Below, piece by piece: positions 4,372 to 61,960 of a stretch of DNA of 64,000 nucleotides. The stretch comes from Octopus sinensis (lineage: Eukaryota). Position 1 is the stretch's first letter, and each line of letters opens with the position of its first letter. Below the pieces are notes generated by a model. That model was not told the origin of the DNA, did no database searches, and saw only the letters and a list, made by a program, of their open reading frames with translations. Position numbers and translations under genes: made by a program. Location of the stretch: assembly GCF_006345805.1 (NCBI RefSeq), contig NC_043007.1:59458001-59522000 (forward strand), given 5' to 3'.

Positions 4372-4885
4372 TGGGTATGTGGTTGAGAAGTTCGCTTCGC
4401 AATCACGTGGTTTTGGGTTCAGTCTGATTGTGTGACACTTTGGACATTTGTCTTTTACAACAGCTCTTGGGCGACCAATGCCTTGTGGGAGAATTTGGCA
4501 GACGGGAACTTTGTGGAAGCCCATCGCGCGCGCGCGTGTATGAAGGAGTGGCTCTGTGGTAAGTAGCTTGCTTACCGACCACATGGTTCTGGGTTCAGTC
4601 TCATTGCGTGGCATCTTAGGCAAGTGTCTTCTACTATAGCCTCGGGCCAACCAAAGCCTTGTGAGTGGATTTGGTAGACGGAAAATGAAAGAAGCCTGTC
4701 GTATGTGTGTGTGTGTGTGTTTGTCACCCCAACATCGCTTGGCAACTGATGCTGGTGTGTTTACGTCCCTGTAACTTAGCGGTTCGGCAAAAGAGACCAA
4801 TAGAATAAGTACTAGGCTTACAAGGAATAAGTCTTGGGGTCGATTTGCTCGACTAAAGGCGATGCTCCAGCATGGCCGCAGTCTG
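4372..4885 (+). mobile_element. tRNA-headed SINE, family A (partial copy followed by a full copy from ~4545)
   Basis: A/B-box-like head (tggctctgtggtaag...ggttcagtc), internal (GT)n and tail gctccagcatggccgcagtc. The same unit recurs many times in the window. Confidence 0.85.
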
Positions 4886-6068: not shown

Positions 6069-6401
6069 TGTGTGCGTGCGCGTGTGCGCGCCTATGTGTC
6101 CATACTGAGAGAAATCTACTGTGGGAAAGAATCGGTTCCACGAGGCAACCCGATCTGAAGAATGCTCTCAATATAAGGACATGAAAGCAAGAGAATGCAC
6201 ATTGAAGCCTACAGTGATGACTCCACATCTTACACACGCACACATAAACACACAGATACACATACATACACATATACGGGTGTGAGAGAGAGTAGAAATA
6301 CATACAAATGTAGAGGTAAAATTAATTCGTTTCAAACAATGATTTCTCACAATGGTACAAGACTGTATCTTTGCAATACGGTGTAGGTGTATCGTCAATT
6401 A

Positions 6402-7260
6402 GGATCTTTTCCTTTTGAACGGCACTTTGTAACATAATTTCTAGGTAACTACAAAGTTTTAAACTTTGTATACTGGTAGAATGTGTTTATAAAACATCAT
6501 TTTCTCTTGGCTTTATTGAGAAAATTCTATATGTTGAAAGATATTTCGTCTTTAATTTCGAGCATTTCGGCAATTTTAACCAATCGCTGACGTCCATTTA
6601 GGTAAATAACATTCTGTGCATAATAAATATGTCCCTCCTTTAAGAAACATATTGGGTTTATTTACATTTGTGAAGAAAAAGATACCCTTCCCCCACCCCT
6701 AACCCTAACCCTAACCCTAACCCTAACCCTAACTAACCCTAACTCTAACCCTAAATCTAAAATAGATCGATACTAGGGTTATAATTATGGGTGACAATTT
6801 CATACGACACCGCTACGGAAAATGGGATTTTTTCTAGCGGTGTCAAATGAAAATGTCACCTATAATTATGGCCCTAGTATCGATCTATTGCATTTCAATC
6901 TATTTTAGATTTAGGGTTAGAGTTAGGGTTAGTTAGGGTTAGGGTTAGGGTTAGGGTTAGGGGTTGGGGAAGGGCATCTTTTTTTTCTTCACAAATGTAA
7001 ATAAACCCAATCTGTTTCTTAAAGGAGGGACATATTCATTATGCACAGAATGTTATTTACCAAAATGGACGTCAGCGATTGGTTAAAATTGCCGAAATGC
7101 TCGAAATTAAAGACGAAATATCTTACAACCTATAGAATTTTCTCAACAAAGCCAAGAGAAAATGATGTTTTATAAACACATTCTACCAGTATACAAAGTT
7201 TAAAACTTTGTAGTTACCTAGAAATTATGTTACAAAGTGCCGTTTAAAAGGAAAATATCC
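6402..7260. mobile_element. Non-autonomous foldback DNA transposon with internal telomeric repeats and 8-bp TSD
   Basis: The whole element is an imperfect palindrome with termini ggatcttttccttttgaacggcac / gtgccgtttaaaaggaaaatatcc. GTCAATTA flanks both ends (6394-6401, 7261-7268). (CCCTAA)n lies at ~6698-6755 and (TTAGGG)n at ~6911-6963. Confidence 0.9.
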
Positions 7261-7329
7261 GTCAATTAAATCTACCCAAATATAAAATTGGCATCTATTC
7301 TAAAGGGAAGCATTTAGTTCGGTACTGCA

Positions 7330-8605
7330 ATGAAACTAACAATCTACCTCCAGTCAACGCAGTACCCTCCGCACAGTCTCCTTATCCGACAAAAACAACC
7401 GTTGTGTTTTTCTGCGGAGTATGCATGTCAAGTAACTTGACTCAATATTAAACAACACCTGCCGCCTGATCACTGGTCGCATGAAACTCATCAACATAAA
7501 CAACCTGCACCTTCGCGTTAACACTGTCCCTGCTGATATGAGATATGAAGGAAGCAGTCGAGTCGAGATGACAAAAAATGCGGTGGGTGGGGGCACAATG
7601 AATAACCAATTCTCGGATAGCCACCACTCGTAACTATAAATAAGTAAATAAACGGGATGGTCACGTTTATTGTGATTGTGAATAAAATTGATCTGGCGTT
7701 GAAGAAGAAGAAGAAGAAGAAGAAGAAGAAGAAGAAGAAGAAGAAGAAGAAGAAGAAGAAGAAGAAGAAGAAGAAGAAGAAGAACAACAACAACACAACA
7801 ACAACATTACAATAAAGCAGCAACAATATAATGGAGCTGCTAAAAATAGTAGTCCAAACTCACTTAAATCATATCAGTCGTCTTGAAAATGTAAGAGCAC
7901 ATTCGGTAATGCACCCCTAGATGCACTGTATCAGGAAAAATTACTGGATGGTCACGTCTGTAACGCCTCTAATTGCTGGTCATCTGGTTCAGGAATAACC
8001 TGAGGCTAAACAACATCTACGGTCAATGGAGAGCGTGTGACATGTCTAGACTATAACACTCCAATTACTGCATACAAGAAATTTAGTCGTTCAATCGGTT
8101 ATCTGTGAACTATCGATCTGTTTGAACAGAAATGACTCGGAGCAATACAGTCGAGAAAGCTATCTCCTCAATAGACGCCAAACCTCGGCCCAAACACTAA
8201 AGTCATGAAGAAGCTTCCTCCGCTGTGTCCGGCCCCTAACAACATCTCTGGTAGTTACCAGATTCCGGCTCTGGTTGAAAAGCTTAAGAATGAATCTTCT
8301 CCAGTTAATACGGGAATCTCCCTGCTGAAGTTCTTTCCTCCTGGCTCAGAAACACCATGGATTTAGTGGAAGATACTCAGGTACCTGAGAACGAGAGTTG
8401 GACGATCAAAAACTAATCTGGTGAGTTGCTTTGGTCAGCCTGGCCCAGTCACATGTGAACGTAGTGAAGCAGACTATTCTAAGGAGCATTGCCTTGTCTA
8501 TCCTCCTCTACTAACCTCTGCAACACAAAAGAACTTGCAGGGTTCAATAAAAATGCAAAGAACTGTGTAAAGAAATGGGAAACTGCCACATAAGCATGAC
8601 ACGCC
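7330..8605 (+). mobile_element. Degenerate 3' end of an Ingi/Vingi-like (I group) LINE, split by a ~570-bp insertion
   Basis: Hand translation gives AEYACQV / DSILNNTCRLITGRMKLININNLHL...EMTK | QYSRESYLLNRRQTSAQTLKS*RSFLRCVRPL / PPGSETPWI*WKILRYLRTRVGRSKTNL...KNCVKKWETAT*. This resembles the C-terminal region of Ingi/Vingi ORFs as I recall it. Many stops and frameshifts. Confidence 0.65.
7573..8144 (+). repeat. Copy 1 of a ~570-bp direct duplication containing (GAA)n(CAA)n
   Basis: Near-identical to 11971-12516, from aaaaaatgcggtgggtgggggcac to gaaatgactcggagca. Confidence 0.95.
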
Positions 8606-10359: not shown

Positions 10360-10560
10360 TATTTTACTTGTTTTAGTCATTTGAGTGCGGCCCTGCTGGA
10401 GCACCACCTTGAAGTGTTTTTGTCGAACAATTCGACCCCAGAACTTACTTATAAGTCTAGTACTTATTCTATCGGTCTCTTTGCCGAGCCGCTACGTTAC
10501 GGGGACGTAAATACATAAACACCGGTTGTCAAGCGATGATGGGGGACAAACACAGACACA

Positions 10561-10601
<41 letters not shown>

Positions 10602-10770
10602 ACACATACATGACGGGATTCTTTCAGTTTCCGTCTACCAAATCTACTCACAAGGTTTTGGTCGGCCCAAGGCTTTAGTAGAAGAGGCTTGTCCCAGGTG
10701 CCACGCAGTGGGACTGAACCCATAACCATGTGGTTGGAAAGCAAGCTTCTTACCACAAAGCCACGCTTGC
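10360..10770 (-). mobile_element. SINE, family A
   Basis: Reverse-complement homolog of 4545-4885 with internal (CA)n. Confidence 0.85.
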
Positions 10771-11970: not shown

Positions 11971-12516
11971 AAAAAATGCGGTGGGTGGGGGCACAATGAA
12001 TAACCAATTCTCAGATAGCCACCACTCGTAACTATAAATAAGTAAATAAACAGGATGGTCACGTTTATTGTGATTGTGAATAAAATTGACCTGGCGTTGA
12101 AGAAGAAGAAGAAGAAGAAGAAGAAGAAGAAGAAGAAGAAGAAGAAGAAGAAGAAGAACAACAACAACAACAACAACATTACAATAAAGCAGCAACAATA
12201 TTATGGAGCTGCTAAAAATAATAGTCCAAACTCACTCAAATCATATCAGTCGTCTTGAAAATGTAAGAGCACATTCGGTAATGCACCCCTAGATGCACTG
12301 TATCAGGAAAAATTACTGGATGGTCACGTCTGTAACGCCTCTAATTGCTGGTCATCTGGTTCAGGAATAACCTGAGGCTAAACAACATCTACGGTCAATG
12401 GAGAGCGTGTGACATGTCTAGACTATAACACTCCAATTACTGCATACAAGAAATTTAGTCGTTCAATCGGTTATCTGTGAACTATCGATCTGTTTGAACA
12501 GAAATGACTCGGAGCA
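11971..12516 (+). repeat. Copy 2 of the ~570-bp direct duplication
   Basis: Near-identical to 7573-8144, differing mainly in GAA/CAA repeat number and a few substitutions. Confidence 0.95.
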
Positions 12517-12595
12517 GTACAACAACGACAACAACAACAACAAGAACAGCAACAGCAGCAGCAAGAGCAGCAGTAGTAACATCATCATTATCTGC

Positions 12596-13050: not shown

Positions 13051-13122
13051 GGGGATGTAGCTCAGTGGTAGAGCGTTCGCTTTGCATGCGAAAGGCCCTG
13101 GGTTCGATACCCAGCATCTCCA
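13051..13122 (+). tRNA. tRNA-Ala-TGC: tRNA-Ala (anticodon UGC)
   Basis: 72-nt cloverleaf: acceptor GGGGATG/CATCTCC with the G3:U70 alanine determinant, D arm GCTC/GAGC, anticodon stem TTCGC/GCGAA with loop TT-TGC-AT, T arm CTGGG/CCCAG with loop TTCGATA, discriminator A. No intron. Confidence 0.96.
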
Positions 13123-17265: not shown

Positions 17266-17689
17266 TAAAAATAGATCCGCTAGGTTTCAGCCACGAAGAA
17301 TTGTTTCCGATGAAAGTTAGCACGACTACTAGCGTAAACGAACAGGGCAAAATTTTTGATGTAGTATCTGTTTCCGTGAATTTTGGCGGGCTGTGGCGGG
17401 GGCACTTGAATTATAACAGCGAATGCAATCGACTGAACCGCACGTGTGTTTATCGTTATGGTAAAATCGGGCGTGCGGTTGAGTAATTTGTATTCTGGAC
17501 GGGTTCGGCTGAGGAGCTACAGATATGTTATGTGAGTAAAATGACATAATTTATTAATAGCGAAACAATTGTCCTGAATTAATCTGCATTTTTGTTATTT
17601 TTATTTGCCCTGTTCGTTTCCGCTAGTAGTCGTGCTAACTTTCATCGGAAACAATTCTTCGTGGCTGAAGCCTAGCGGATCTATTTTTA
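17266..17689. mobile_element. MITE-like element with ~85-bp terminal inverted repeats
   Basis: The left arm taaaaatagatccgctagg...gaacagggcaaaat is the near-perfect reverse complement of 17604-17689. No clear TSD. Confidence 0.8.
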
Positions 17690-17754
17690 GTACTAGAGTC
17701 GACCACATAGTGGTTACTCTCTTATATTTACGTATAATATATATATATATATAT

Positions 17755-18012
17755 ATATTATCCGAAGTGTACAGCTTTATATATCCATCGCCGTCAATCT
17801 AACTAATCGGTTTCGCGCCAGGGATTGAACGAAGTGTAAAGTAACAAACCGATCATGCGAGTCGCCATATTTCATTTCATAACGGCTACCTCTGATGAGC
17901 GCAGGGTTACATAATCGAATTGTTACTTAAAACTCCGCTGAATCTCTAGTGCGAAACCGATTGATAAGCTTGGTCGTTATGTATGTATAATACTGTACAC
18001 TTCGGATAATAT
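17755..18012. repeat. Inverted-repeat unit (~70-bp arms) containing a hammerhead-like core
   Basis: Termini atattatccgaagtgtacag / ctgtacacttcggataatat. On the + strand, CTGATGA (17892-17898), a GCGCAGGG...CTCTAGTGC stem and GAAAC (17953-17957). Confidence 0.7.
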
Positions 18013-18104
18013 ACCATCTCTATTGACAGATATACGAGTGCATTTTTTCATGACTTATGGACTCTTAAATGACTTACACACATGCATATATATATATATA
18101 TATA

Positions 18105-20004: not shown

Positions 20005-20385
20005 CACTAAACTGCGGCCATGCTGGGACTCTGTCTTGAAGAATTTTAGTCGAACGAACCGACTCCAGTATTTGATTTTTAAAACCTGATTCTTATTTTA
20101 TCGGTCTATTTTGACAAACAGCTAAGTTACGGGGACATAAATACACCAACACCAGTTGTGAAACGGAGGTGGAAGACAAACACAGATACCAAGACGAATA
20201 CACCTGCACCCCCCCCCACACACACATACACACATACATACACATATATACATACACACGGTGAGCTCCTTTCAGTTTCCGTCTATTAAATCCATTCACC
20301 CAAGGTACCATGCAGTGGAACTGAACCTGAACCTGAAACCATGTGGTGGGGAAGCAAACTTTTTACACAACTACCCCTGCGCCTA
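20005..20385 (-). mobile_element. SINE, family A
   Basis: tgcggccatgctggg tail and accatgtggtggggaagcaaac head on the reverse strand. Confidence 0.8.
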
Positions 20386-21949: not shown

Positions 21950-22101
<152 letters not shown>

Positions 22102-22773
22102 GCAATAATAAATCTCTGAACAAGATGTAAACAGTAACTGCTCGACCACGTAAAGTATACTAGCCACCTCGATATGGCTAACCACTAAGGGTGGGTGTTA
22201 CTGTAGCTTTTAGCCCCAGGAGATCATCGTCTCCAGCTGGCTTTAGGCACACTTTCTGTGCCCTTATGGTTTACGGGAGAGGGATGACCCCCCTTTGCAA
22301 ATACCATAAGGGTACAGAAAGTGTGCCTAAAGCCAGCTGGAGACGATGATCTCCTGGGGCTAAAAGCTACAGTAACACCCACCCTTAGTGGTTAGCCATA
22401 TTGAGATGGCTAGTATACTTTACGTTGTCGAGCGGTTACTGTTTACATCTCGTTCAGAGATTTATTATTGCTTGCAGAATGTTTTTCGAAATCAGTGACA
22501 ATAGTTACTGGGAAAAACATTAAATAGATATTTGCAAACAGGTCTCTCTTCATCGAAAACCGGTGATTACCGTACGTTGACAAGAGGCAAATACCTTGAA
22601 ACTGCAGTCTGTGCGTATCACTTAGGTTTACGAGAGAGAGATGACCTCCCTTTGCAAATACCATAAGGGTACAGAAAGTGTGCCTAAAGCCAGCTGGAAA
22701 CGATGATCTCCTGGGGCTAAAAGCTACAGTAACACCCACCCTTAGTGGTTAGCCATATTGAGATGGCTAGTAT
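22102..22773. repeat. Inverted plus direct triplication (hairpin with ~170-bp arms and a third copy 357 bp downstream)
   Basis: 22102-22270 is the reverse complement of 22303-22471. Loop plus arm (22268-22418) is repeated directly at 22625-22773. Confidence 0.9.
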
Positions 22774-22783
22774 TCTTTATATA

Positions 22784-22825
<42 letters not shown>

Positions 22826-23094
22826 ATATTATATATATATATATTATATATATATAGATAGATAGATAGATATGTGTACACACACACACACATAAATTTA
22901 ATTAGAGGATATGTTAACCTCATGAAGGGATGGTTGCATCCAAAGAAATACTGGTTCAATACCTAGTATTCTTGGGGAATGAAATTCCCTTAAAACAATA
23001 GGTATGTATTGAGGATATAGCTTATATCCAGTTAAAAGAAGAAAAGAAAGTGGAGATAACGAAGTTAACAGATATTATTAACAAATTGGTCATC

Positions 23095-23348
23095 TTCGCT
23101 TCTCACAGCTGTTTCAATTAATACTGAATAATTTAATTAAAAATTTGTTCATTAAATTTGCATTTATGTGACACGAGCATAATTTCATCAGAGGAAAAAA
23201 TATATGTACTTTGAGATGCTATATGCGGACCTATCAACTCATTTCAGCAGACTGCTGAAATTATACTCATGTCACATAAATGCAAATTTAATGTAAAAAT
23301 TTGTAATTAAATTATTGAGTATTAATTGAAACGGCTGTAAGAAGCGAA
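23095..23348. repeat. Inverted-repeat unit (~95-bp arms), each arm a minimal hammerhead-like motif
   Basis: Minus strand: CTGATGA (23191-23185), AATTA...TAATT, GAAAC-AGCT-GTG. Plus strand: CTGCTGA (23252-23258), AATTA...TAATT, GAAAC-GGCT-GTA (23328-23339). Confidence 0.8.
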
Positions 23349-23412
23349 AATGGGCAATTTTTTGATAATAGATAATTATTAACTTCCTTATCTCCATTTT
23401 CTTTTCATCTTT

Positions 23413-25601: not shown

Positions 25602-25951
25602 ATTTTTTGCGTAATAAGATAAAAAAACCCAAGGCTGTATAGATATTAGAGCATTTATAGATAGAAGGTCTTACAGCTATTTCTAGGATATTAATTAATA
25701 ATATCCCTTCATCGGAGACGGTGTGAGAGGAAAAATTAAGTCATAGTTAGTTTCGATGTGATACAAATCTCCACCTCAACTCTCTATTTGTATCACATCG
25801 AAACTAACAATGACTTAATTTTTCCTCTCACGCCGTCTCCGATGAAGGGATATTATTAATTAATATCCTAGAAACAGCTGTAAGAGCTTCTATCTAGAAA
25901 TGCTCTAATATCTATACAGCCTTGGTTTTTTTAATCTCATTACGCAAAAAA
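25602..25951. repeat. Near-perfect palindrome (~165-bp arms, 17-nt loop), each arm carrying a minimal hammerhead-like motif
   Basis: The arms meet at the loop 25769-25785. Plus strand: CCGATGA (25839-25845), GGGATATTA/TAATATCCT, GAAAC-AGCT-GTA (25871-25882). A mirror copy lies on the minus strand. Confidence 0.85.
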
Positions 25952-26106
25952 TAAAACAAATTAAAAGGATGGCTTATTAGCAATTTGAACCTAAAGGCAA
26001 AATTAATAGAAGTCACAAAAGTGACAGAGGGTACTGACTAGCACCGATTTGGCTAAAAATAAGAGTTAAAACAACTCGACCAAAAGCTCGAATGTTATGA
26101 CTAGTA

Positions 26107-39166: not shown

Positions 39167-40412
39167 CAGGGGCTGGACAAAATAATGGAAATACCTCGCA
39201 TCATAGCATCATAATTTTGAAACATCTATAAAACCGCCAAAAGCTTGTTTATTTTGGTTTTTTTATTTATCATTAGTGTTGCTTAATACGTTTTGCTAAA
39301 ATGGCTGTTACTTTTCAGATATCATTAGAAAAAGGTAATTAAAATTCATTAAAATGACAGATCTATCGTACTGTCAAAGAGGTCAAATTGTTGGTGCTCG
39401 TATGGCAGTGCTAGTGTAATGAAAACAGCCAAAATGTTTGGTGTATCAAGAAGTACTGTCTCGAAAATAATGCCAGGCTTTGAGAAAAAGGGAAAAACCT
39501 CCTCGTCAAAACAAAACTCCGGAAGAAAACCAAAACTTTCAGATAGGGACTGTCGGACTCTTATGCGAAAAGATCACAAAAGTACAGCTCCCAAAATTAC
39601 TGCAGAGCTTAACGATCACCTCGAGAACCCAGCGTCTACAAAAAATGTTCGACGGGAGCTGCACGAAGCCAAATTTCACGGGAAGGCTGCAATCAGAAAA
39701 CCACTATTTTGAAAAAACAAACGTTGCAAAGAATTTAGAGTAGAATAAAAACCTACAGAATTGGTCCCAGAGCAGCGAAAGAATGTTCTTTTCTCAGACG
39801 AGTATTCCTTTACCTTATTTCTGACCACCGGCCGAGTATACGTGTGGAGACAGCCAAAAGAAGCATTTGACCCACACTGCTTCCTCCAACTGTTAAAACA
39901 TGGAGGAGGATATGTGTTGATTTGGTGGAAATCTGCTGGCCCAATGGCTTCCCTTCATGGCAAAATTAATAGTCAAGACTATTTAAGCATTTTATCTGAT
40001 CAAATTCATCCTATGGTTGCAGAACTGTTTCCGGAGGGAAATGCAATCTTTCAGGATGATAATGAACCAATTCACACAGCTAAAGTTGTTACTGAATGGT
40101 ACGAGGAACATTCAAATGAAGTTGAACATCTTATCTGGCCACCACAGTCCCCAGACCTCAATATTATTGAACATTTATGGTGCATTTTAGAAAAACAAGT
40201 AAGAAGTCAATATTCTCCACCACCATCACTACAAGATCTGGAGACTGTTTTAGCTGAAGAATGGACAAAAATTCCTTTGGAAACAGTTAAAAATTTGTAC
40301 GAGTCCATACCTTGTAGAATTCAAGCTGTAATTACTGCCATAGGCGGTCCTACCCATATTAAAAAAATTGTTTGAAATTTTAAGGTGCTTCCATTATTTT
40401 GTCCAACCCCTG
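39167..40412 (+). mobile_element. Full-length Tc1/mariner-superfamily element with DD36E triad (Incomer-like), inactivated by frameshifts
   Basis: ~30-bp TIRs caggggctggacaaaataatggaaatacct / aggtgcttccattattttgtccaacccctg with TA on both sides. ATG at 39354 (MTDLSYCQRGQIVGAR), then FSDE...FQDDN...SPDLNIIEHLW. 36 residues lie between the second D and the E, counted by hand. Confidence 0.93.
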
Positions 40413-45261: not shown

Positions 45262-47320
45262 TTACTCTTAATCTGCATGTTTGTTACAATCACTTGCCGA
45301 GACACACCCGGCGTTCTGGGGCGAGTGAAGGATAAGAGATGTTAAAGGATGCTTTGAGTCCTGAGCTTCTCAACCATTGCTGGGATTTTTCTTTGTCTAT
45401 TTCTTTTGCATTTAGTTTAGTCCAGTATTTACCATGAAGGGGCTTTTCTTGCCATCGTTTTATCATGGTTCTTTACTGTTCTAGTTTTAGCTTGGATTTC
45501 ATTTGTTTTATAGCTTTTGTTGTTTCTTCATCACCTTCTTCTTCTTCTTCTTCTTCTTCTTCTTCTTCTTCTTCTTCTTCTTCTTCTTCTTCTTCTTCTT
45601 CTTCTTCTTCTTCTTCTTCTTCTTCTTCTTCTTCTTCTTCTTCTTCTTCTTCTTCTTCTTCTTCTTCTTCATATTTATTAGGTGTTATGATTTCTTGTTT
45701 GTATTTAAGCTTCCTTAAATATTGAGAACAGTTTTTTGTTTTGCTCGTGTTTTGCCGCTATTTGAATCAGTTTTCCTTCCTTCTGAAGTAGATATTTTTG
45801 CAGTCCTATGGTGGTTATTTTATAGTAGTTTTCCAGCTGTATAAGGCCTCTACCACCTTCTATACGTTGTATATATAGTCTTTCTATGTCAGATTTTGGG
45901 TGATGCATCCTAGATCCTGTCATTATTTTTCTTGTTTTCCTATCTATTTTGGTCAGTTCATTTAGTGTCCAGTTAAGGATATTGTAGCTGTAACTTATAA
46001 CTGGGACAGCTAAAGTGTTAATACCTATTATCTTGTTTTTAGCATTGAGCTCTGTTTTTAGTATTTATCTAACTCGTCTATAATATTCTTTTTTTATTTT
46101 CTCTTTCATTTGTGTGTGTTGTGTCTTATCTAGTTCATGGATTCCTAAGTATTTGTAAGTTTGGCTTTGGTCTAATTCTTTTATTTCATTGGTTTTATCT
46201 AGTGTGATGTTGCTACTCTTAACTAGTTTTCCTCTTTTCATATCTATTTATTTGATAAATCCATCAACTGTCTTTAATAGTGTTTCCAGCTGTTTGTCAT
46301 TTGCAGCGTATAGTTTTAGGTCATCCATATATAAAAGGTAGCTGATCGTTTTGCCGTAACATTTATATCCACATCCAGTTCTATTTAGCATATCAGATAG
46401 AGGTGACAGTGCCAAGCAGAAAAGGAGTGGAGAGAGCGTGTCTTCCTGGAATATTCCTCTTCTAATGGGGATGGCTTTGGTTTTCATGAGTCCCTCTTTT
46501 GTTTGGAGCTGTAACACTGTTTGCCATTTATTCATAGAGTGTCCTATGAATTTTATAATTGTTGGTGCTACTTTGTTAATGGCTAGTGTTTCGAGGATCC
46601 ATGTGTGGGGGATGCTATCAAACGCCTTTTTGTAGTCGATCCAGGCCATACTGAGGCCTTTCTTCTTTCTGTGGCTGTCTTCAGTTATGGCTTTATTAAT
46701 CATTAGTTGATCTTTACAGCCATATGAGCCTTTGCGGCATCCTTTCTGCTCTTCTGGAAACAGGTTGTTTTCGTCTAGGTGCTTGTTCAACCTTTGCGAT
46801 ATCACTGCAGTAAATGCCTTGTACATTGTAGGGAGACAGGTTATTGGTCTGTAGTTTTCTGGTTTTGCTGTCTCATTTGATTTAGGAATTAAGATGGTTT
46901 TCCCCTTCGTGAGCCATTCAGGCATTGTCTCTGGCTCTGCTAGTATGTTGTTAAAGTTTTCAGCCAGCTTTTTGTGCATTCCTGTTAGATTTTTCAACCA
47001 GAAGTTGGGGATCTTGTCATGCCCAGGTGCCTTCCAGTTGCTTAGTCTTTGAAGTGTCTGGGTGACCTCTTCAGTTGTTATGGGGGTCCAAAGTTGTTCA
47101 GATGCTGAGTTTGTTGTTTTAATACTCCTTTTTTTTTGGTTGTTCGTTCGCCGACCATATTTCTCTCCAGAATTCTTCCACTTCTACTGCTGTTGGTGCT
47201 ACAGTGATTTCTATTTTATTTTTGCCAAGTTCTTGGTAGAACTTTTTGGGGTTGGAGTTGAACTTTTTGTTTTGTTCAAAGAAGCGCTGGCGTTTCTCGT
47301 ACCGGCGGATCCTTTGTGCT
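45262..47320 (-). mobile_element. R4/Dong-clade LINE (RT domain; RLE region deleted; 3' end in TAA repeats)
   Basis: 249-aa ORF with NYRPITCL, QKGCR, WIDYKKAFDSIPH, GIFQ.D.LSPLLF and LYMDDLKLYA. Downstream HPKSDIERLYI...GGRGL and WQEKPLHGKY. Ends at taaataataat (~45252-45264). Confidence 0.92.
45536..45670 (-). repeat. (GAA)45 tract inside the LINE reading frame
   Basis: 135 nt of perfect TTC repeat between ...PNKY and GDEETTKAIK on the minus strand. Confidence 0.9.
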
Positions 47321-48419: not shown

Positions 48420-48722
48420 ATTAATAACTTTCTTGTGAGTCAAGATCCTTGATAGTAGCGTCAGTAACTAATTTAATGGAGGCTGTTTGTCTGAGTTTGC
48501 CTCTTACAAAAGTTGCTTTAGCATATTTATCGAGGCCGAAACCCATCCCGATGTCATTTCTAAACTCTTTAACAGTTGCTAGCAGCCCTATTAGCTCTTG
48601 GTAATTTCTAGCAAACAGCTTTAGATCATCCATATAAAACAGCTGGTTTATTATAGTGTTATAGATTTTGTACCCATACCTGGTGCTATTCAGTTCGTTT
48701 GAGAGTGGAATTAATGCCACCA
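48420..48722 (-). mobile_element. R4/Dong-clade RT fragment next to an (ACC)n array
   Basis: LIPLSNELNSTRYGY...QLFYMDDLKLFA...FRNDIGMGFGLDKYAKATF. (ACC)n spans ~48720-48860. Confidence 0.88.
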
Positions 48723-49149
48723 GCACCACCACCAAAACCACCACCAAAACCTCCACCACCACCACCACCACCACCACCACCACACCACCACCACCACCAC
48801 CACCACCACCACCACCACCACCACCACCACCACCACCACCACCACAACCACCACCACCTTAAAAATAAAGTGTAAGTTAACCAGAAAAGAGTTTCATTCA
48901 AGTCTATCTCTATGATTGTTTCAAAGGATGCTTCTTCACATCGTTAATGTACAATCCATTAAGGAAATCCAAAGGCAATCCCTTTTCATCAGCAGAAAAC
49001 TTATAAAGGCTTCACATTTCCGGTAGTCACAGACAAGTTAAAATAGACAAGTTAAAATAAGAATTCATACACATATACATATGTGTGTGTGTGAGTGTAT
49101 GAACACGCTTACATATACATATGTATACATATATAGATTATGTCATATT

Positions 49150-51964: not shown

Positions 51965-52110
51965 GGTTACTCTTTTACTCTTTGACTCTTTTACTTGTTT
52001 CAGCCATTTGACTGTGGCCATGCTGGGGCACCGCCTTTAGTCGAGCACATCGACCTCAGGACTTATTCTTTGTAAGCCTAGTACTTATTCTATCAGTCTC
52101 TTTCGCCGAA
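51965..52110 (-). mobile_element. SINE family A, 3' half
   Basis: gactgtggccatgctggggcaccgcctttagtcgagc...gccgaaccgc. Confidence 0.75.
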
Positions 52111-52213
52111 CCGCATATGCATGTATGTATGTATGTATGTATATATATATAAACTAAATAAACAGATAGCTAGATAGATATGTATGAATACATGTACTTT
52201 TGCCTTTTTGTGT

Positions 52214-56729: not shown

Positions 56730-59560
56730 AGAACTACATCATAAACTCTCAAATACAATCCAAAATAGAAAACAAATTAAAATTGAGAACTATATAACAA
56801 AAGAAATTATACAAGGACTAAAACCAGATCTCACTGAATTAAACGAAATTATTTCTACAAGTGCTAAGACAATTGAAACCAGTTGTATGCCTCTGAAAAA
56901 AAAACAAAGAAATAGAAGCCCGAGAATTCCAAACTGGAAAAGTAAAATTGAAAAAGAGATAGAAATAATGAGCTAATCTGTGGAAACGATGAAAAAACTA
57001 GAAAAAGAATAAAGATGAAAAGAAAATATAGATTCTCATCAAGAGAAAAACTACTTTCAGCAAAAGAAACACCGCAACAAAATATCCAAGCAAAAGCTCA
57101 AAGAATTCGAAAATTTGAGAGGAGAAACAAATTTTACAAGCAAAATAAGGTACCAAATTTCTGGCCTGCATCGCTCTTGTGCGCACACGAAAAGTTAGTC
57201 CAGTTATCCAATGAAATTATGAGAGATCCTATGAAAACACCTGCTTGGTTAGCAAGAGGTATTACTTACCTACTCCCGAAGAATAATGAAACCAAATTTT
57301 CCCAAAATTATCGGCACATAACGTGTCTATCTACCACGTATAAAATGTTAACATTCATCCTCGTGGAGAAAACATAAAAAATTATGGAACAGAATGATAT
57401 TTTCCCTCACTGATCAAAAAGGGTGCCGACGAGGCTCACATGGATGCAAATACCAACTCTTATGTAATCGCATAATCCTTGAGAACTGTCATAACAAACG
57501 CAGAAATCTCAGTTCCACATAGATTGATTATGAAAAGGCCTTTGACAGCATACCGCATTCATGGATCTTGAAATCGCTGGATATCTTCAAAATTTCTCTC
57601 GTGATTTCAAACTTACCGAAGCACAACATGGCAGTGTGGAATAAGAATCTCTTATTATACCACTCTAATGGAGTATTGATCACAAAAGGTATTAATATCA
57701 TCTGCGACATTTTCTAAGGTGACTCATTTTCACCTTTAATTTTTTGCATAGCCCTAAGACCCCTTACTAGTGAGCTTAACAGAACAGGGTATGGATATAA
57801 AATTGGCGACAAGAAAATATGTAATCTATTTTATATGGATGACTTAAAACTCTATGGCAAAGACGAAAATGAGCTTGAAGGACGACTATGTACAGTAAAA
57901 GCATTTCAGCGATGACATTGGGATAGAATTTGGTCTTGATAAATGTGCCAAGGCCACTTTTCAGAAAGGGAAATTGAAGAATTCACATTCAGTGGTATTG
58001 GATGTCATAATAGAACTCGAGTAGGAATAAACTTACAGATACCTCGGAATAAATGAGGGATCTGATATTCAGCATGTAAGCATGAAAGAGAAGGTCAGGA
58101 AGGAATGTAACAGGAGAGTTCGAGCAGTCCTAAAATCCGAATTCAGTGTACGTAACAAGGTGTTAGCTATAAATTCCTTAACAGTTCCGGTTGTTAGTTA
58201 GTTTCAATGGGTTGAACTAGAATATGAGCAAAATAAGGAAGATTTACAGGAAAATCTGTAAGCTGCTGACCACCCAAGTGCAGACACAAATCATCTTTAC
58301 CTACCCAGTGCTCAAGGAGTTCAAGGTTTGATCCAATTTGAAATCTCTTACAAAACCACCACAACTGGACTGGCAAAATACCTTGAAACACCTAACAACT
58401 AGATACTAAAGCTCGTTGAAAACTAAGAAAGACATAAGAAGCTTCATTCTGTTATGAAGGAGACGAAAAATTTTCAAGTGTGTTCATGAATAATACCCAG
58501 GTTGAACCGCACGATAAAAATGCAGCAACTGTAGTTACAAAGCTGAAATCAATTGCAAAACAAAATGCTGATAGGTAGGAACAAAAACATCTGCATGCAA
58601 ATATGTGGACCGTGACAAACAAGACCAGAAGCACACCCATCAGTGACTACGAAGCTCAGGGCTAAAGGCAGAGAGTGAAGGCATTATCTTAGCTGCCCAA
58701 CATCAGTGCTTATTGGCTCGGAACTATCAAGCCAATATGATGAAAAATGATGTAGACCCAAATTGCCGATACTGCAACGATGGGATTGAAACAGTGGACC
58801 ATCCAATCTCTGGGTGTAAGATTTTAGCACTTGTAGAGTACAAATCAAGATATGACAGAGCTGGAAATATCTACATTGGATAATGTGTCGGCATTATAAA
58901 ATCAGAACTGCTGACAGATGGTACAAGCACTACCCTGAGGCTGTAACTGAGGGAGAAAATGTAACGATTCTTTGAGACTTTCCAGTATGTACTGACTGGA
59001 CTATCAAAGCAAATAAACCATATATTGTGGTGAAAGATCAAAACAACAAAGTCTGTTTATTGATTGACATGAGCATATCCCGTGATCATAATATCTCGGC
59101 AAAAGAATTTGATAAGCTCAGGAAATATAAAGATTCGCTAATCGAAATCGAAAAGATGTGGCATCTCAAGACGGTTACAATACTAGTGATTGTAGAAGCA
59201 CTTGGAATGATAAAAAAAGGAACTGAAAATTATTTAAGAATGATCCCTGGCTTACCATCCATGTAGGAAGTGCAAAAGATTATCTTAACTTGAACATCAC
59301 ACGTATTGAGAAGAGCATTGTCACTGAATTTTCTTTCCTTTTTCCCTTTATTTTCTTTGTTTATTTTTAATTTTAAAAATTTTATTTTTTCTCTCTGTCT
59401 TTCTTCCCCTTTTCTCTATCAAATGACTTTGTAAATGAACTATCTGGTGCGTTTATTTTAATGGCTTACCTATGTATACAGTGCGTTTCTCTGCCCTAGG
59501 TCTCAGGAAGACACTCGGAAAGAAACAGAAACAAAATTGAAAGAAGATGATAATGAAAAC
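56730..59560 (+). mobile_element. Decayed, 5'-truncated R4/Dong-clade LINE (same 3' family as 52286-52687)
   Basis: NYRHITCL, QKGCR, DYEKAFDSIPHSW, LFYMDDLKLYG, CRYCNDGIETVDHPISGC and ANKPYIVV...EFDKLRKYKD. The 3' UTR is shared with 52595-52675. Flanked by TAA-rich tracts. Confidence 0.92.
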
Positions 59561-61732: not shown

Positions 61733-61807
<75 letters not shown>

Positions 61808-61960
61808 CATGCTTATTTCAGTTTCCGTCTACCAAATCTACTCACATTGCTTTGGTTGGGCTGAGGCTATAGTAGAAGACACTTGCCCAAGATGCTATGT
61901 AGTGGGACTGAATCCGGAACCATGTGGTTGGGAAGCAAGTTTCTTATCACACAGCCACAT
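61075..61960 (-). mobile_element. SINE family A stretched to ~880 bp by an expanded internal microsatellite and a nested inverted-repeat element
   Basis: The tail half (61075-61265) and head half (61811-61958) are collinear with family A. They are separated by (TAT)n, (TA)n, (TG)n and the element at 61463-61702. Confidence 0.75.
61463..61702. mobile_element. MITE-like inverted repeat (~75-bp arms)
   Basis: ggaaaatatgttgaaaatgcacctaaatttcaaaaacttgtaaatg versus catttacgagtttttgaaatttaggtgtatttttaacaacacgttttcc. Confidence 0.75.

What the first reader, a model, noticed from the sequence alone, without database searches (positions are those of the whole stretch)
6394..7268. Foldback transposon carrying outward-facing telomere arrays (CCCTAA...TTAGGG) with a clean 8-bp TSD
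Seen: an 859-bp element that is almost entirely a hairpin, with ~420-bp arms and a ~19-nt loop near 6815-6833. It has GG...CC termini and a perfect GTCAATTA duplication. Each arm holds ~9 telomeric hexamers arranged 5'-(CCCTAA)n...(TTAGGG)n-3', like a miniature linear chromosome. This is the opposite of a telomere-fusion scar. Known: TTAGGG is the telomere repeat of most metazoans including molluscs, and 8-bp TSDs are typical of hAT, P and Merlin. Inference: this non-autonomous DNA transposon disperses interstitial telomeric seeds and G-quadruplex or cruciform-prone sites, and may recruit telomere-binding proteins. GG termini with long TIRs fit Merlin best, but I cannot assign the superfamily.
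Basis: partly seen in the sequence, partly recalled or inferred. Interest (0 to 1): 0.72.

Follow-up and report, generated by a model that had tools for sequence, protein, structure and literature searches.

The report
Palindromic transposon carrying mirrored telomere repeats
An 859-base, non-coding, hairpin-shaped mobile element sits here with a clean insertion footprint and carried two mirror-image blocks of telomere repeat into a chromosome interior; this is a tidy example of a known kind of element, not a new kind.

Summary
Window 6402-7260 is an 859-bp near-perfect palindrome. Its arms are 424 and 435 bp and match at 397 of 417 aligned bases. It starts GG and ends CC. A perfect GTCAATTA repeat flanks it; this can also be read as a 9-bp CGTCAATTA repeat. 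Each arm holds about 9-10 telomeric hexamers, CCCTAA on the left and TTAGGG on the right.

The best reading is a non-autonomous cut-and-paste DNA transposon of the palindromic MITE (foldback-like) type. GG ends, an 8-9-bp TSD and long TIRs meet the published structural criteria for Merlin. MULE, Zisupton and Novosib are not excluded.

The "miniature chromosome" arrangement is probably a by-product. Both arrays carry the same degenerate units in mirrored order, so one internal array was copied when a half-element became a palindrome. The TSD encloses the finished palindrome, so this insertion did move telomeric repeats to an interstitial site.

Not testable here: copy number, TSDs of other copies, an autonomous partner, an empty site, and Dfam/Repbase status. 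No reachable collection contains this genome. Telomere-protein recruitment and telomere seeding are speculation. Five other short palindromic elements lie in the same 64 kb, so the hairpin shape is ordinary locally. Interest is modest.

The parts
6394..6401 (.). Left target-site duplication GTCAATTA (9-bp alternative CGTCAATTA, 6393-6401)
   Evidence: Direct reading. TSD scan gives k=8 at offsets 0/0 and k=9 with the right end at 7259. Chance rate 1.9e-4 for 8-mers, 1.2e-4 for 9-mers.
6402..7260 (.). Whole element: 859-bp palindromic non-autonomous DNA transposon with termini GG...CC
   Evidence: No ORF longer than 44 aa.
6402..6684 (+). Left outer arm (TIR core), 283 bp. Holds a 21-nt internal palindrome TACAAAGTTTTAAACTTTGTA at 6450-6470.
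   Evidence: 9 mismatches in 283 aligned bases against the right outer arm. The short palindrome is family D4.
6685..6760 (+). Left C-strand telomeric array: degenerate CCCTTC/CCCCAC units, then (CCCTAA)6, then CTAA-CCCTAA-CTCTAA-CCCTAA-ATCTAA
   Evidence: A G-quadruplex motif lies on the minus strand at 6685-6739.
6761..6816 (+). Left inner arm
   Evidence: Pairs with 6834-6889 (I4). The inner region is more diverged, 10/64.
6817..6833 (.). Centre of symmetry and loop (axis at 6824-6826)
   Evidence: Fold. I4 leaves 3 nt between the innermost arms.
6834..6889 (+). Right inner arm
6890..6904 (+). 15-bp insertion (GCATTTCAATCTATT) present only in the right arm, next to the array
   Evidence: 15-column gap in the arm alignment.
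6905..6974 (+). Right G-strand telomeric array: TTAGAT-TTAGGG-TTAGAG-TTAGGG-TTAG-(TTAGGG)5-GTTGGGGAAGGG. It mirrors the left array but has one unit fewer.
   Evidence: A G-quadruplex motif lies on the plus strand at 6926-6974.
6975..7260 (-). Right outer arm (TIR core)
7261..7268 (.). Right target-site duplication GTCAATTA (9-bp alternative 7260-7268)

Best explanation
This is one insertion of a non-autonomous, cut-and-paste (class II) DNA transposon whose whole body is a palindrome: a foldback-like MITE.

Shown:
- The element is an 859-bp palindrome with GG/CC ends and no coding capacity.
- It is bracketed exactly by an 8-bp (possibly 9-bp) target-site duplication.
- The two telomeric arrays are mirror copies that share the same variant units.

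Inferred:
1. A transposase supplied in trans bound the two identical ends, cut the target with an 8-9-bp stagger and integrated the element. Gap repair then produced the duplication.
2. The superfamily that best fits GG termini, an 8-9-bp TSD and TIRs up to several hundred bp is Merlin. I put that sub-claim at about 0.45. MULE, Zisupton, Novosib and P remain possible.
3. The palindrome arose earlier, when a half-element (one transposon end, an internal (CCCTAA)n tract and about 65 bp more) was copied in inverted orientation. The likely route is hairpin formation or template switching at a break. This produced two perfect ends and also mirrored the single array.
4. The telomeric repeats are a passenger, not a working part. 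The paired orientation has no function of its own.

Consequences:
- Shown for this one event: about 146 bp of telomeric repeat were delivered to an interstitial site.
- Predicted from sequence: a G-quadruplex motif on each strand.
- Inferred from general knowledge, not tested here: a long palindrome with a short spacer that could extrude hairpins or cruciforms.
For: - Palindrome: (397/417 aligned bases identical, z = -54).
- Exact ends and TSD. Chance of such flanks is about 2e-4 in this window. Five control palindromes in the same window show nothing comparable.
- No coding capacity.
- Mirrored arrays: they share CTAACTAACCCTAACTCTAACCCTAAATCTAA and differ by one unit.
- The palindrome does not extend into the flanks (outward extension 0).
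- Merlin criteria from the literature: TIRs of 24-462 bp, conserved terminal 5'-GG and 8- or 9-bp TSDs (PMC8101967). All new Merlin families in that study also start with GG.
- Among molluscs, Merlin, Zisupton and Novosib are almost confined to cephalopods (PMC10294476). Octopus bimaculoides had the most Merlin transposase hits of any bilaterian surveyed. This is relevant only if the host is an octopus.
- Arm divergence of 3.2% in the outer arms is compatible with an intact TSD.
Against: - Only one copy could be examined. There is none elsewhere in the window.
- None was found in JGI metagenome contigs, GTDB genome contigs or IMG/VR. The single hit was a chance 21-mer.
- The protein collections do not contain this genome.
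- Family status, variable TSDs and a matching autonomous element are therefore unproven.
- No Merlin (DDE_Tnp_IS1595) domain lies in the window.
- The 9-bp reading of the TSD would also fit MULEs.
- Terminal motifs of Zisupton and Novosib could not be compared.
- Host identity is unverified.
Confidence: 0.62

Rival explanations
1. Same kind of element, but mobilised by a superfamily other than Merlin. One option is a MULE/Mutator derivative, reading the 9-bp CGTCAATTA as the TSD together with the long TIRs. Another is one of the other 8-bp-TSD superfamilies present in cephalopods: Zisupton, Novosib, P or hAT.
For: - The TSD can be read as 9 bp.
- Long TIRs are typical of TIR-MULEs (my own knowledge).
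- In O. vulgaris, recently active Mutator families outnumber Merlin 21 to 2 (PMC13282606).
- Zisupton and Novosib co-occur with Merlin in cephalopods.
Against: - The 9-bp reading shifts the two ends out of register: GGATC... against GATAT....
- The 8-bp reading gives symmetric GG/CC ends, which is the conserved Merlin hallmark.
- hAT ends normally read YARNG with short TIRs (my own knowledge), which is not met here.
Confidence: 0.25
2. The paired, outward-facing arrays are a selected feature: a mini-chromosome-like cassette that recruits telomere-binding proteins, seeds telomeres, or stabilises the excised linear intermediate.
For: - In the excised linear element the G-strands would run 5'->3' towards the element's ends.
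- The purest repeats lie on the outer side and the degenerate units on the centre side, as in real telomeres.
- The arrays differ by only 1 of 70 aligned bases, against 3.2% in the outer arms.
Against: - The arrays are mirror copies of one array, so the orientation needs no selection.
- They lie 283-295 bp inside the ends, so they cannot cap them.
- A break at the palindrome centre would leave both arrays in the wrong orientation to seed a telomere.
- 1/70 against 9/283 is not a significant difference.
- There is no binding or expression evidence.
Confidence: 0.08
3. Not a transposon. It is a local inverted duplication made during repair of a double-strand break, perhaps one at which telomerase first added repeats. 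The flanking 8-mer would be chance or repair microhomology.
For: - Telomerase-mediated insertion of TTAGGG at break sites is documented in vertebrates (PMC7215372 and PMC8537989, listed; summarised in PMC9693754).
- Foldback repair makes palindromes.
- Only one copy was seen.
Against: - Foldback repair does not create a direct duplication of the flanking target exactly abutting both ends.
- The chance of such flanks is about 2e-4.
- There is no parental single-arm copy nearby.
- The palindrome ends sharply at GG/CC.
Confidence: 0.04
4. Assembly artefact: a chimeric or foldback long read collapsed into a palindrome.
For: Palindromic chimeras are a known long-read artefact (my own knowledge).
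Against: - The arms differ by 20 substitutions and three indels, including a 15-bp one.
- The structure lies inside unique sequence and is bracketed by a TSD.
- It is small and is not at a contig end.
Confidence: 0.02

Closest known systems
Non-autonomous Merlin elements / Merlin MITEs (Feschotte 2004, as summarised in PMC8101967)
   Same: Terminal 5'-GG, 8- or 9-bp TSD, TIRs that can reach several hundred bp (24-462 bp reported), no coding capacity, AT-rich target.
   Different: No link to a DDE_Tnp_IS1595 transposase could be shown. The whole element is TIR, with no distinct internal region. It carries telomeric hexamer arrays, which are not a described Merlin feature.
Foldback elements (Drosophila FB; Galileo/Kepler/Newton of the P superfamily)
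   Same: Very long inverted arms make up nearly the whole element, it is hairpin-prone, and it is non-coding in most copies.
   Different: FB arms are built of tandem subrepeats that grow in complexity inwards. Here the arms are unique sequence apart from the hexamer tract. Galileo makes 7-bp TSDs, and FB/Galileo termini differ (my own knowledge).
Palindromic MITEs that fold into long hairpins (e.g. human MADE1, source of mir-548; plant MITE-derived miRNA hairpins)
   Same: The full-length palindrome gives a perfect hairpin if transcribed. Rfam plant miRNA-hairpin models give sub-threshold, structure-only matches over 6706-6959.
   Different: Those are Tc1/mariner- or other-superfamily-derived with TA TSDs and are about 80-300 bp. 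No evidence of transcription or small RNAs here. The Rfam scores are well below gathering (61 against 90 bits).
Telomere-bearing transposons of ciliates (Tetrahymena Tel-1, Oxytricha TBE1)
   Same: Mobile elements that carry host telomeric repeats in inverted orientation on their two sides.
   Different: In those, the repeats sit at the very termini. Here they begin 283-295 bp inside. Host, transposase family and biology (programmed elimination) all differ. The comparison rests on my own knowledge.
Short interstitial telomeric sequences inserted at double-strand breaks by telomerase (Nergadze/Giulotto model)
   Same: A short (about 10-unit), partly degenerate (TTAGGG)n tract at an internal site. 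This could explain how the progenitor element first acquired its array.
   Different: Those ITSs are single tracts, without inverted arms or a TSD, at orthologous break sites. Here two mirrored tracts arrived inside a transposon.

Membership tests
Merlin superfamily (non-autonomous member) | TIRs begin with conserved 5'-GG | tested here: met
   [quoted passage not shown]. Criterion from PMC8101967.
Merlin superfamily (non-autonomous member) | 8-bp or 9-bp target-site duplication | tested here: met
   GTCAATTA x2, or CGTCAATTA x2. Chance about 2e-4.
Merlin superfamily (non-autonomous member) | TIR length within the reported range (24-462 bp) | tested here: met
   Arms of 424 and 435 bp.
Merlin superfamily (non-autonomous member) | Shares its termini with an autonomous element encoding a DDE_Tnp_IS1595 transposase | not testable with these tools
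   The source genome is not in any searchable collection. No such domain appears among 150 ORFs of the window.
MITE (miniature inverted-repeat transposable element) | Short, non-coding, with TIRs and a TSD | tested here: met
   859 bp, at the upper edge of the usual size range. Longest ORF 44 aa. TIRs and TSD as above.
MITE (miniature inverted-repeat transposable element) | Multiple dispersed copies with different TSDs | not testable with these tools
   One copy in 64 kb. No match in reachable DNA collections.
Foldback elements sensu Drosophila FB | Arms composed of tandem subrepeats | tested here: not met
   Apart from weak, low-scoring matches, the telomeric hexamer tract is the only tandem array in the arms.
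hAT superfamily | 8-bp TSD with short TIRs ending in 5'-YARNG | tested here: not met
   The TSD length fits, but the termini are GGATC and the TIRs exceed 400 bp. The motif criterion is from my own knowledge.
Mutator/MULE (non-autonomous) | 9-11-bp (occasionally 8-bp) TSD with long TIRs | tested here: inconclusive
   A 9-bp reading exists but puts the two ends one base out of register. No MULE domain in the window.
Telomere-bearing elements (Tel-1/TBE1 type) | Telomeric repeats at the extreme termini of the element | tested here: not met
   The arrays occupy 6685-6760 and 6905-6974, which is 283 and 286 bp from the ends.
Telomere-fusion scar | Head-to-head (TTAGGG)n(CCCTAA)n | tested here: not met
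   The orientation is (CCCTAA)n...(TTAGGG)n with 144 bp between.

The most novel reading that the evidence does not exclude
The element belongs to a still-active, multi-copy Merlin-type family in which every member carries the paired telomeric arrays. That would make it a main source of interstitial telomeric sequence in this genome, probably a cephalopod genome. The arrays would do something: recruit Myb-type telomere-binding proteins to the element (helping synapsis or silencing), or yield telomeric double-stranded RNA and small RNAs from read-through hairpin transcripts. The steep rise in arm divergence towards the centre would reflect recurrent centre-break repair of an unstable palindrome.
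Probability: 0.1. Interest if true: 0.6.

Novelty: new member of a known kind. Interest (0 to 1): 0.33.

Why it matters
[quoted passage not shown] Here the insertion footprint encloses a palindrome whose arrays predate it. That is direct sequence-level evidence that a DNA transposon delivered about 146 bp of telomeric repeat to an internal site.

If the family proves numerous, it would offer:
- a simple genome-wide test of how many interstitial telomeric sites in this lineage are transposon-borne rather than fusion or break-repair relics;
- a natural set of sites that combine a G-quadruplex motif with a long palindrome, useful for studying fragility.

On present evidence it is a single, otherwise ordinary MITE-type insertion.

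Tried and rejected
1. Other copies in the window: none (BLASTN, word size 9).
2. Other copies elsewhere:
   - Exact 20-24-mers from three arm regions were scanned against JGI metagenome contigs, GTDB genome contigs and IMG/VR.
   - The only hit, L001, shares just a 21-mer and is chance.
3. The 'spurious ORF' trick to reach eukaryotic contigs:
   - The 44-aa arm ORF gave no exact record and no homologue.
4. Identifying the host or fetching more of its genome:
   - Exact look-ups of window ORFs found nothing.
   - The LINE reverse-transcriptase ORF has a best hit of only 59% identity, on unnamed ENA contigs that share nothing else with the window.
   - An ORF derived from a SINE-like repeat found nothing.
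   - SINE 21-24-mers are not quoted in any held paper.
   - I recognise the SINE-like repeat at 4548-4883 from memory as octopus-like. That is a lead only.
5. A transposase partner in the window:
   - Pfam was run over 150 stop-to-stop ORFs.
   - It found only RVT_1, Mos1/Tc1-type HTH domains and DDE_3.
6. Rfam:
   - The only match at gathering threshold is a tRNA-Ala elsewhere in the window.
   - Sub-threshold matches of the core to the plant miRNA hairpins MIR7807, MIR1435, MIR7723 and MIR1319 are structure-only and were rejected.
7. Nested-insertion idea (a telomere-ended mini-element inside another MITE): rejected, because the array/arm junctions are inverted, not direct, and the arrays share their variants.
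8. Independent telomerase addition at two ends: rejected for the same reason.
9. Literature:
   - No held paper describes a telomere-repeat-bearing DNA transposon in molluscs.
   - The O. vulgaris repeat paper has no sequence library in its held supplement.
   - Feschotte 2004 is not held.

Full report
**Observation**

- Window 6402-7260 is an 859-bp near-perfect palindrome.
- Reverse-complement alignment of 6402-6825 against 6826-7260 gives 397 matches and 20 mismatches. There are three indels of 3 bp, 6 bp (one hexamer unit) and 15 bp.
- The longest ungapped arm pair is 279 nt at 97%.
- As single-stranded DNA the element folds at -431.9 kcal/mol, against -75 +/- 7 for dinucleotide shuffles (z = -54).
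- The symmetry axis is at 6824-6826, and about 17-19 nt around it pair poorly.
- The ends read 5'-GGATC...GATATCC-3'. The palindrome does not extend one base into the flanks.
- Immediately outside the ends lie GTCAATTA (6394-6401) and GTCAATTA (7261-7268). Because a C precedes both, a 9-bp CGTCAATTA duplication with the right end at 7259 is equally exact.
- In this very microsatellite-rich window, identical 8-mers flank a fixed span at a rate of 1.9e-4, and 9-mers at 1.2e-4.
- The same scan on five other palindromic elements of the window found only 3-7-nt matches, at shifted offsets.
- Tandem Repeats Finder reports CCCTAA x10 at 6697-6754 and TTAGGG x9 at 6911-6962.
- These are the only telomeric runs in the 64 kb.

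**Anatomy**

From the outside in, each arm has three parts:
- a 283-bp unique outer segment;
- a roughly 70-76-bp telomeric tract;
- a roughly 56-65-bp inner segment.

Other features:
- The tract starts with degenerate G/C-rich units at its outer edge, continues with 5-6 perfect units, and ends on the centre side with CTAA-CCCTAA-CTCTAA-CCCTAA-ATCTAA.
- This string of variants is identical, in mirror image, in both arms. The arrays differ only by one unit and one substitution at the outer junction.
- No ORF exceeds 44 aa.
- At gathering threshold the only Rfam match in the window is a tRNA-Ala at 13051-13122.
- Sub-threshold matches of the core to plant miRNA hairpin models are structure-only.
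- A G-quadruplex motif is present on the plus strand at 6926-6974 and on the minus strand at 6685-6739.

**What it is**

- A direct duplication of 8-9 bp abutting both ends of an inverted-repeat element is the footprint of a DDE transposase that cuts the target with a stagger.
- The element is non-coding, so it must have been mobilised in trans.
- The published structural definition of Merlin is TIRs of 24-462 bp, a conserved terminal 5'-GG and 8- or 9-bp TSDs (PMC8101967). The same paper says all known Merlin families start with GG.
- All three structural criteria are met here.
- The fourth criterion, which defines the superfamily, is a DDE_Tnp_IS1595 transposase sharing these ends. It could not be tested.
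- Pfam over 150 stop-to-stop ORFs of the window finds only reverse transcriptase and Tc1/mariner pieces.
- Rival superfamilies:
  - hAT fails on terminal motif and TIR length.
  - The Drosophila-type foldback definition fails because the arms are not made of subrepeats.
  - MULE remains possible through the 9-bp reading, although that puts the two ends out of register.
  - Zisupton and Novosib, which co-occur with Merlin in cephalopods (PMC10294476), could not be compared.

**The telomeric arrays**

- The two arrays share the same order of degenerate units. They are therefore copies of one array that already existed, and had already degenerated, before the palindrome formed.
- The simplest history has two steps. 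First, a transposon half (end, internal hexamer tract, about 65 bp more) became capped or copied in inverted orientation at a break. Second, this produced an inverted dimer with two perfect ends.
- This explains the '(CCCTAA)n...(TTAGGG)n' arrangement without any selection. The alternative orientation was equally likely a priori.
- The arrays lie 283-295 bp inside the ends, so they cannot cap an excised molecule.
- A break at the centre would leave both arrays pointing the wrong way for telomere seeding.
- How the progenitor acquired the tract is open. Candidates are microsatellite birth, capture, or telomerase addition during break repair as documented for vertebrate ITSs.
The TSD encloses the finished palindrome, and a half-element cannot transpose. 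The arrays were therefore on board at integration, and this event moved telomeric repeats to an interstitial site.
- Reviews treat that mechanism only as a proposal (PMC6410037, PMC9693754).

**Age and stability**

- Divergence between the arms is graded: 9/283 (3.2%) in the outer arms, 1/70 in the arrays and 10/64 (15.6%) in the inner segment. Fisher p = 2e-4, or p = 0.014 without the eight central columns. A 15-bp insertion at 6890-6904 adds to the central asymmetry.
- Two explanations are possible. The family consensus may already be imperfect at its centre. Alternatively, the centre may have been remodelled, as happens to long palindromes. I cannot distinguish these from one copy.
- An intact TSD is compatible with about 3% arm divergence.

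**Context and host**

- The window is animal-like, non-coding and 37.6% G+C.
- It is packed with microsatellites, LINE reverse-transcriptase fragments and Tc1/mariner fragments.
- It holds several copies of a SINE-like repeat. From memory I recognise this repeat as octopus-like, but I could not verify that with any tool.
- TTAGGG is the telomere repeat reported for Mollusca (PMC6410037).
- If the host is an octopus, several facts become relevant:
  - Merlin is unusually abundant there: 191 transposase hits in O. bimaculoides.
  - In O. vulgaris, recently active insertions come from 2 Merlin, 21 Mutator and 65 MITE families (PMC13282606).
- Five other short palindromic elements lie in the same 64 kb. 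An 'almost entirely hairpin' element is therefore locally commonplace. Only the telomeric passenger and the clean 8/9-bp TSD set this one apart.

**What could not be done**

- No reachable collection contains this genome:
  - DNA scans of metagenome, prokaryote-genome and viral contigs found nothing real.
  - Protein-based routes to eukaryotic contigs failed.
- As a result, copy number, TSD variability, the autonomous partner, empty sites and Dfam/Repbase status remain untested.

**Verdict**

  - It is a palindromic, non-autonomous DNA transposon insertion whose structure fits Merlin best.
  - It demonstrably carried telomeric repeats to an internal site.
  - The mini-chromosome arrangement is a by-product of palindrome formation.
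  - The functional claims are speculation.
- I rate it a new member of a known kind, with modest interest.

Noticed in passing
window 22101-22779; 25602-25952; 23073-23370; 17266-17689; 17754-18013: Five further short palindromic (foldback-type) elements. Arm lengths and identities are 170 nt/96% (with a third arm copy at 22660-22779), 167 nt/95%, 119 nt/88%, 86 nt/98% (TA...TA flanks, Tc1/mariner-MITE-like) and 104 nt/77%. None shares sequence with the finding, and none has an 8/9-bp TSD.
   Followed up: partly
window 6761-6904 versus 6402-6684: Divergence between the two arms rises steeply towards the palindrome centre: 15.6% against 3.2% (Fisher p = 2e-4). A 15-bp insertion at 6890-6904 is present in one arm only. 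This may reflect centre remodelling of an unstable palindrome or an imperfect family consensus.
   Followed up: partly
window 4548-4883, 10383-10764, 61807-61958, 52010-52114, 20011-20184 and others: Several copies (71-90% identical) of a SINE-like dispersed repeat. From memory I recognise it as octopus-like. No tool result confirms the host.
   Followed up: partly
window 13051-13122 (+): An intact tRNA-Ala (TGC) gene, found by both ARAGORN and Rfam (72.5 bits). It may be a real tRNA gene or the head of a SINE.
   Followed up: no
window 7573-8149 and 11971-12521: A 577-bp direct duplication at 94% identity, beginning about 300 bp downstream of the element. Each copy contains a (GAA)n tract (7701-7784, 12099-12158).
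   Followed up: no
window 46251-47183 (-), 48424-48858 (-), 57015-57377 (+), 39749-40372 (+): LINE reverse-transcriptase fragments. The best database relative of the 249-aa ORF is only 59% identical, so this LINE lineage or host is absent from the protein collection. There is also a Tc1/mariner DDE_3 fragment with Mos1-type HTH pieces nearby.
   Followed up: partly
whole window: Extreme microsatellite density: 66 Tandem Repeats Finder rows with score >= 80 in 64 kb. Many are long tetranucleotide (CTAT/TATC/TCTA/TATG) and dinucleotide arrays of 100-400 bp.
   Followed up: no
window 6450-6470 and 7192-7212: A 21-nt perfect mini-palindrome, TACAAAGTTTTAAACTTTGTA, lies 49 bp inside each end of the element. 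It is a candidate subterminal protein-binding site. This was not tested.
   Followed up: no
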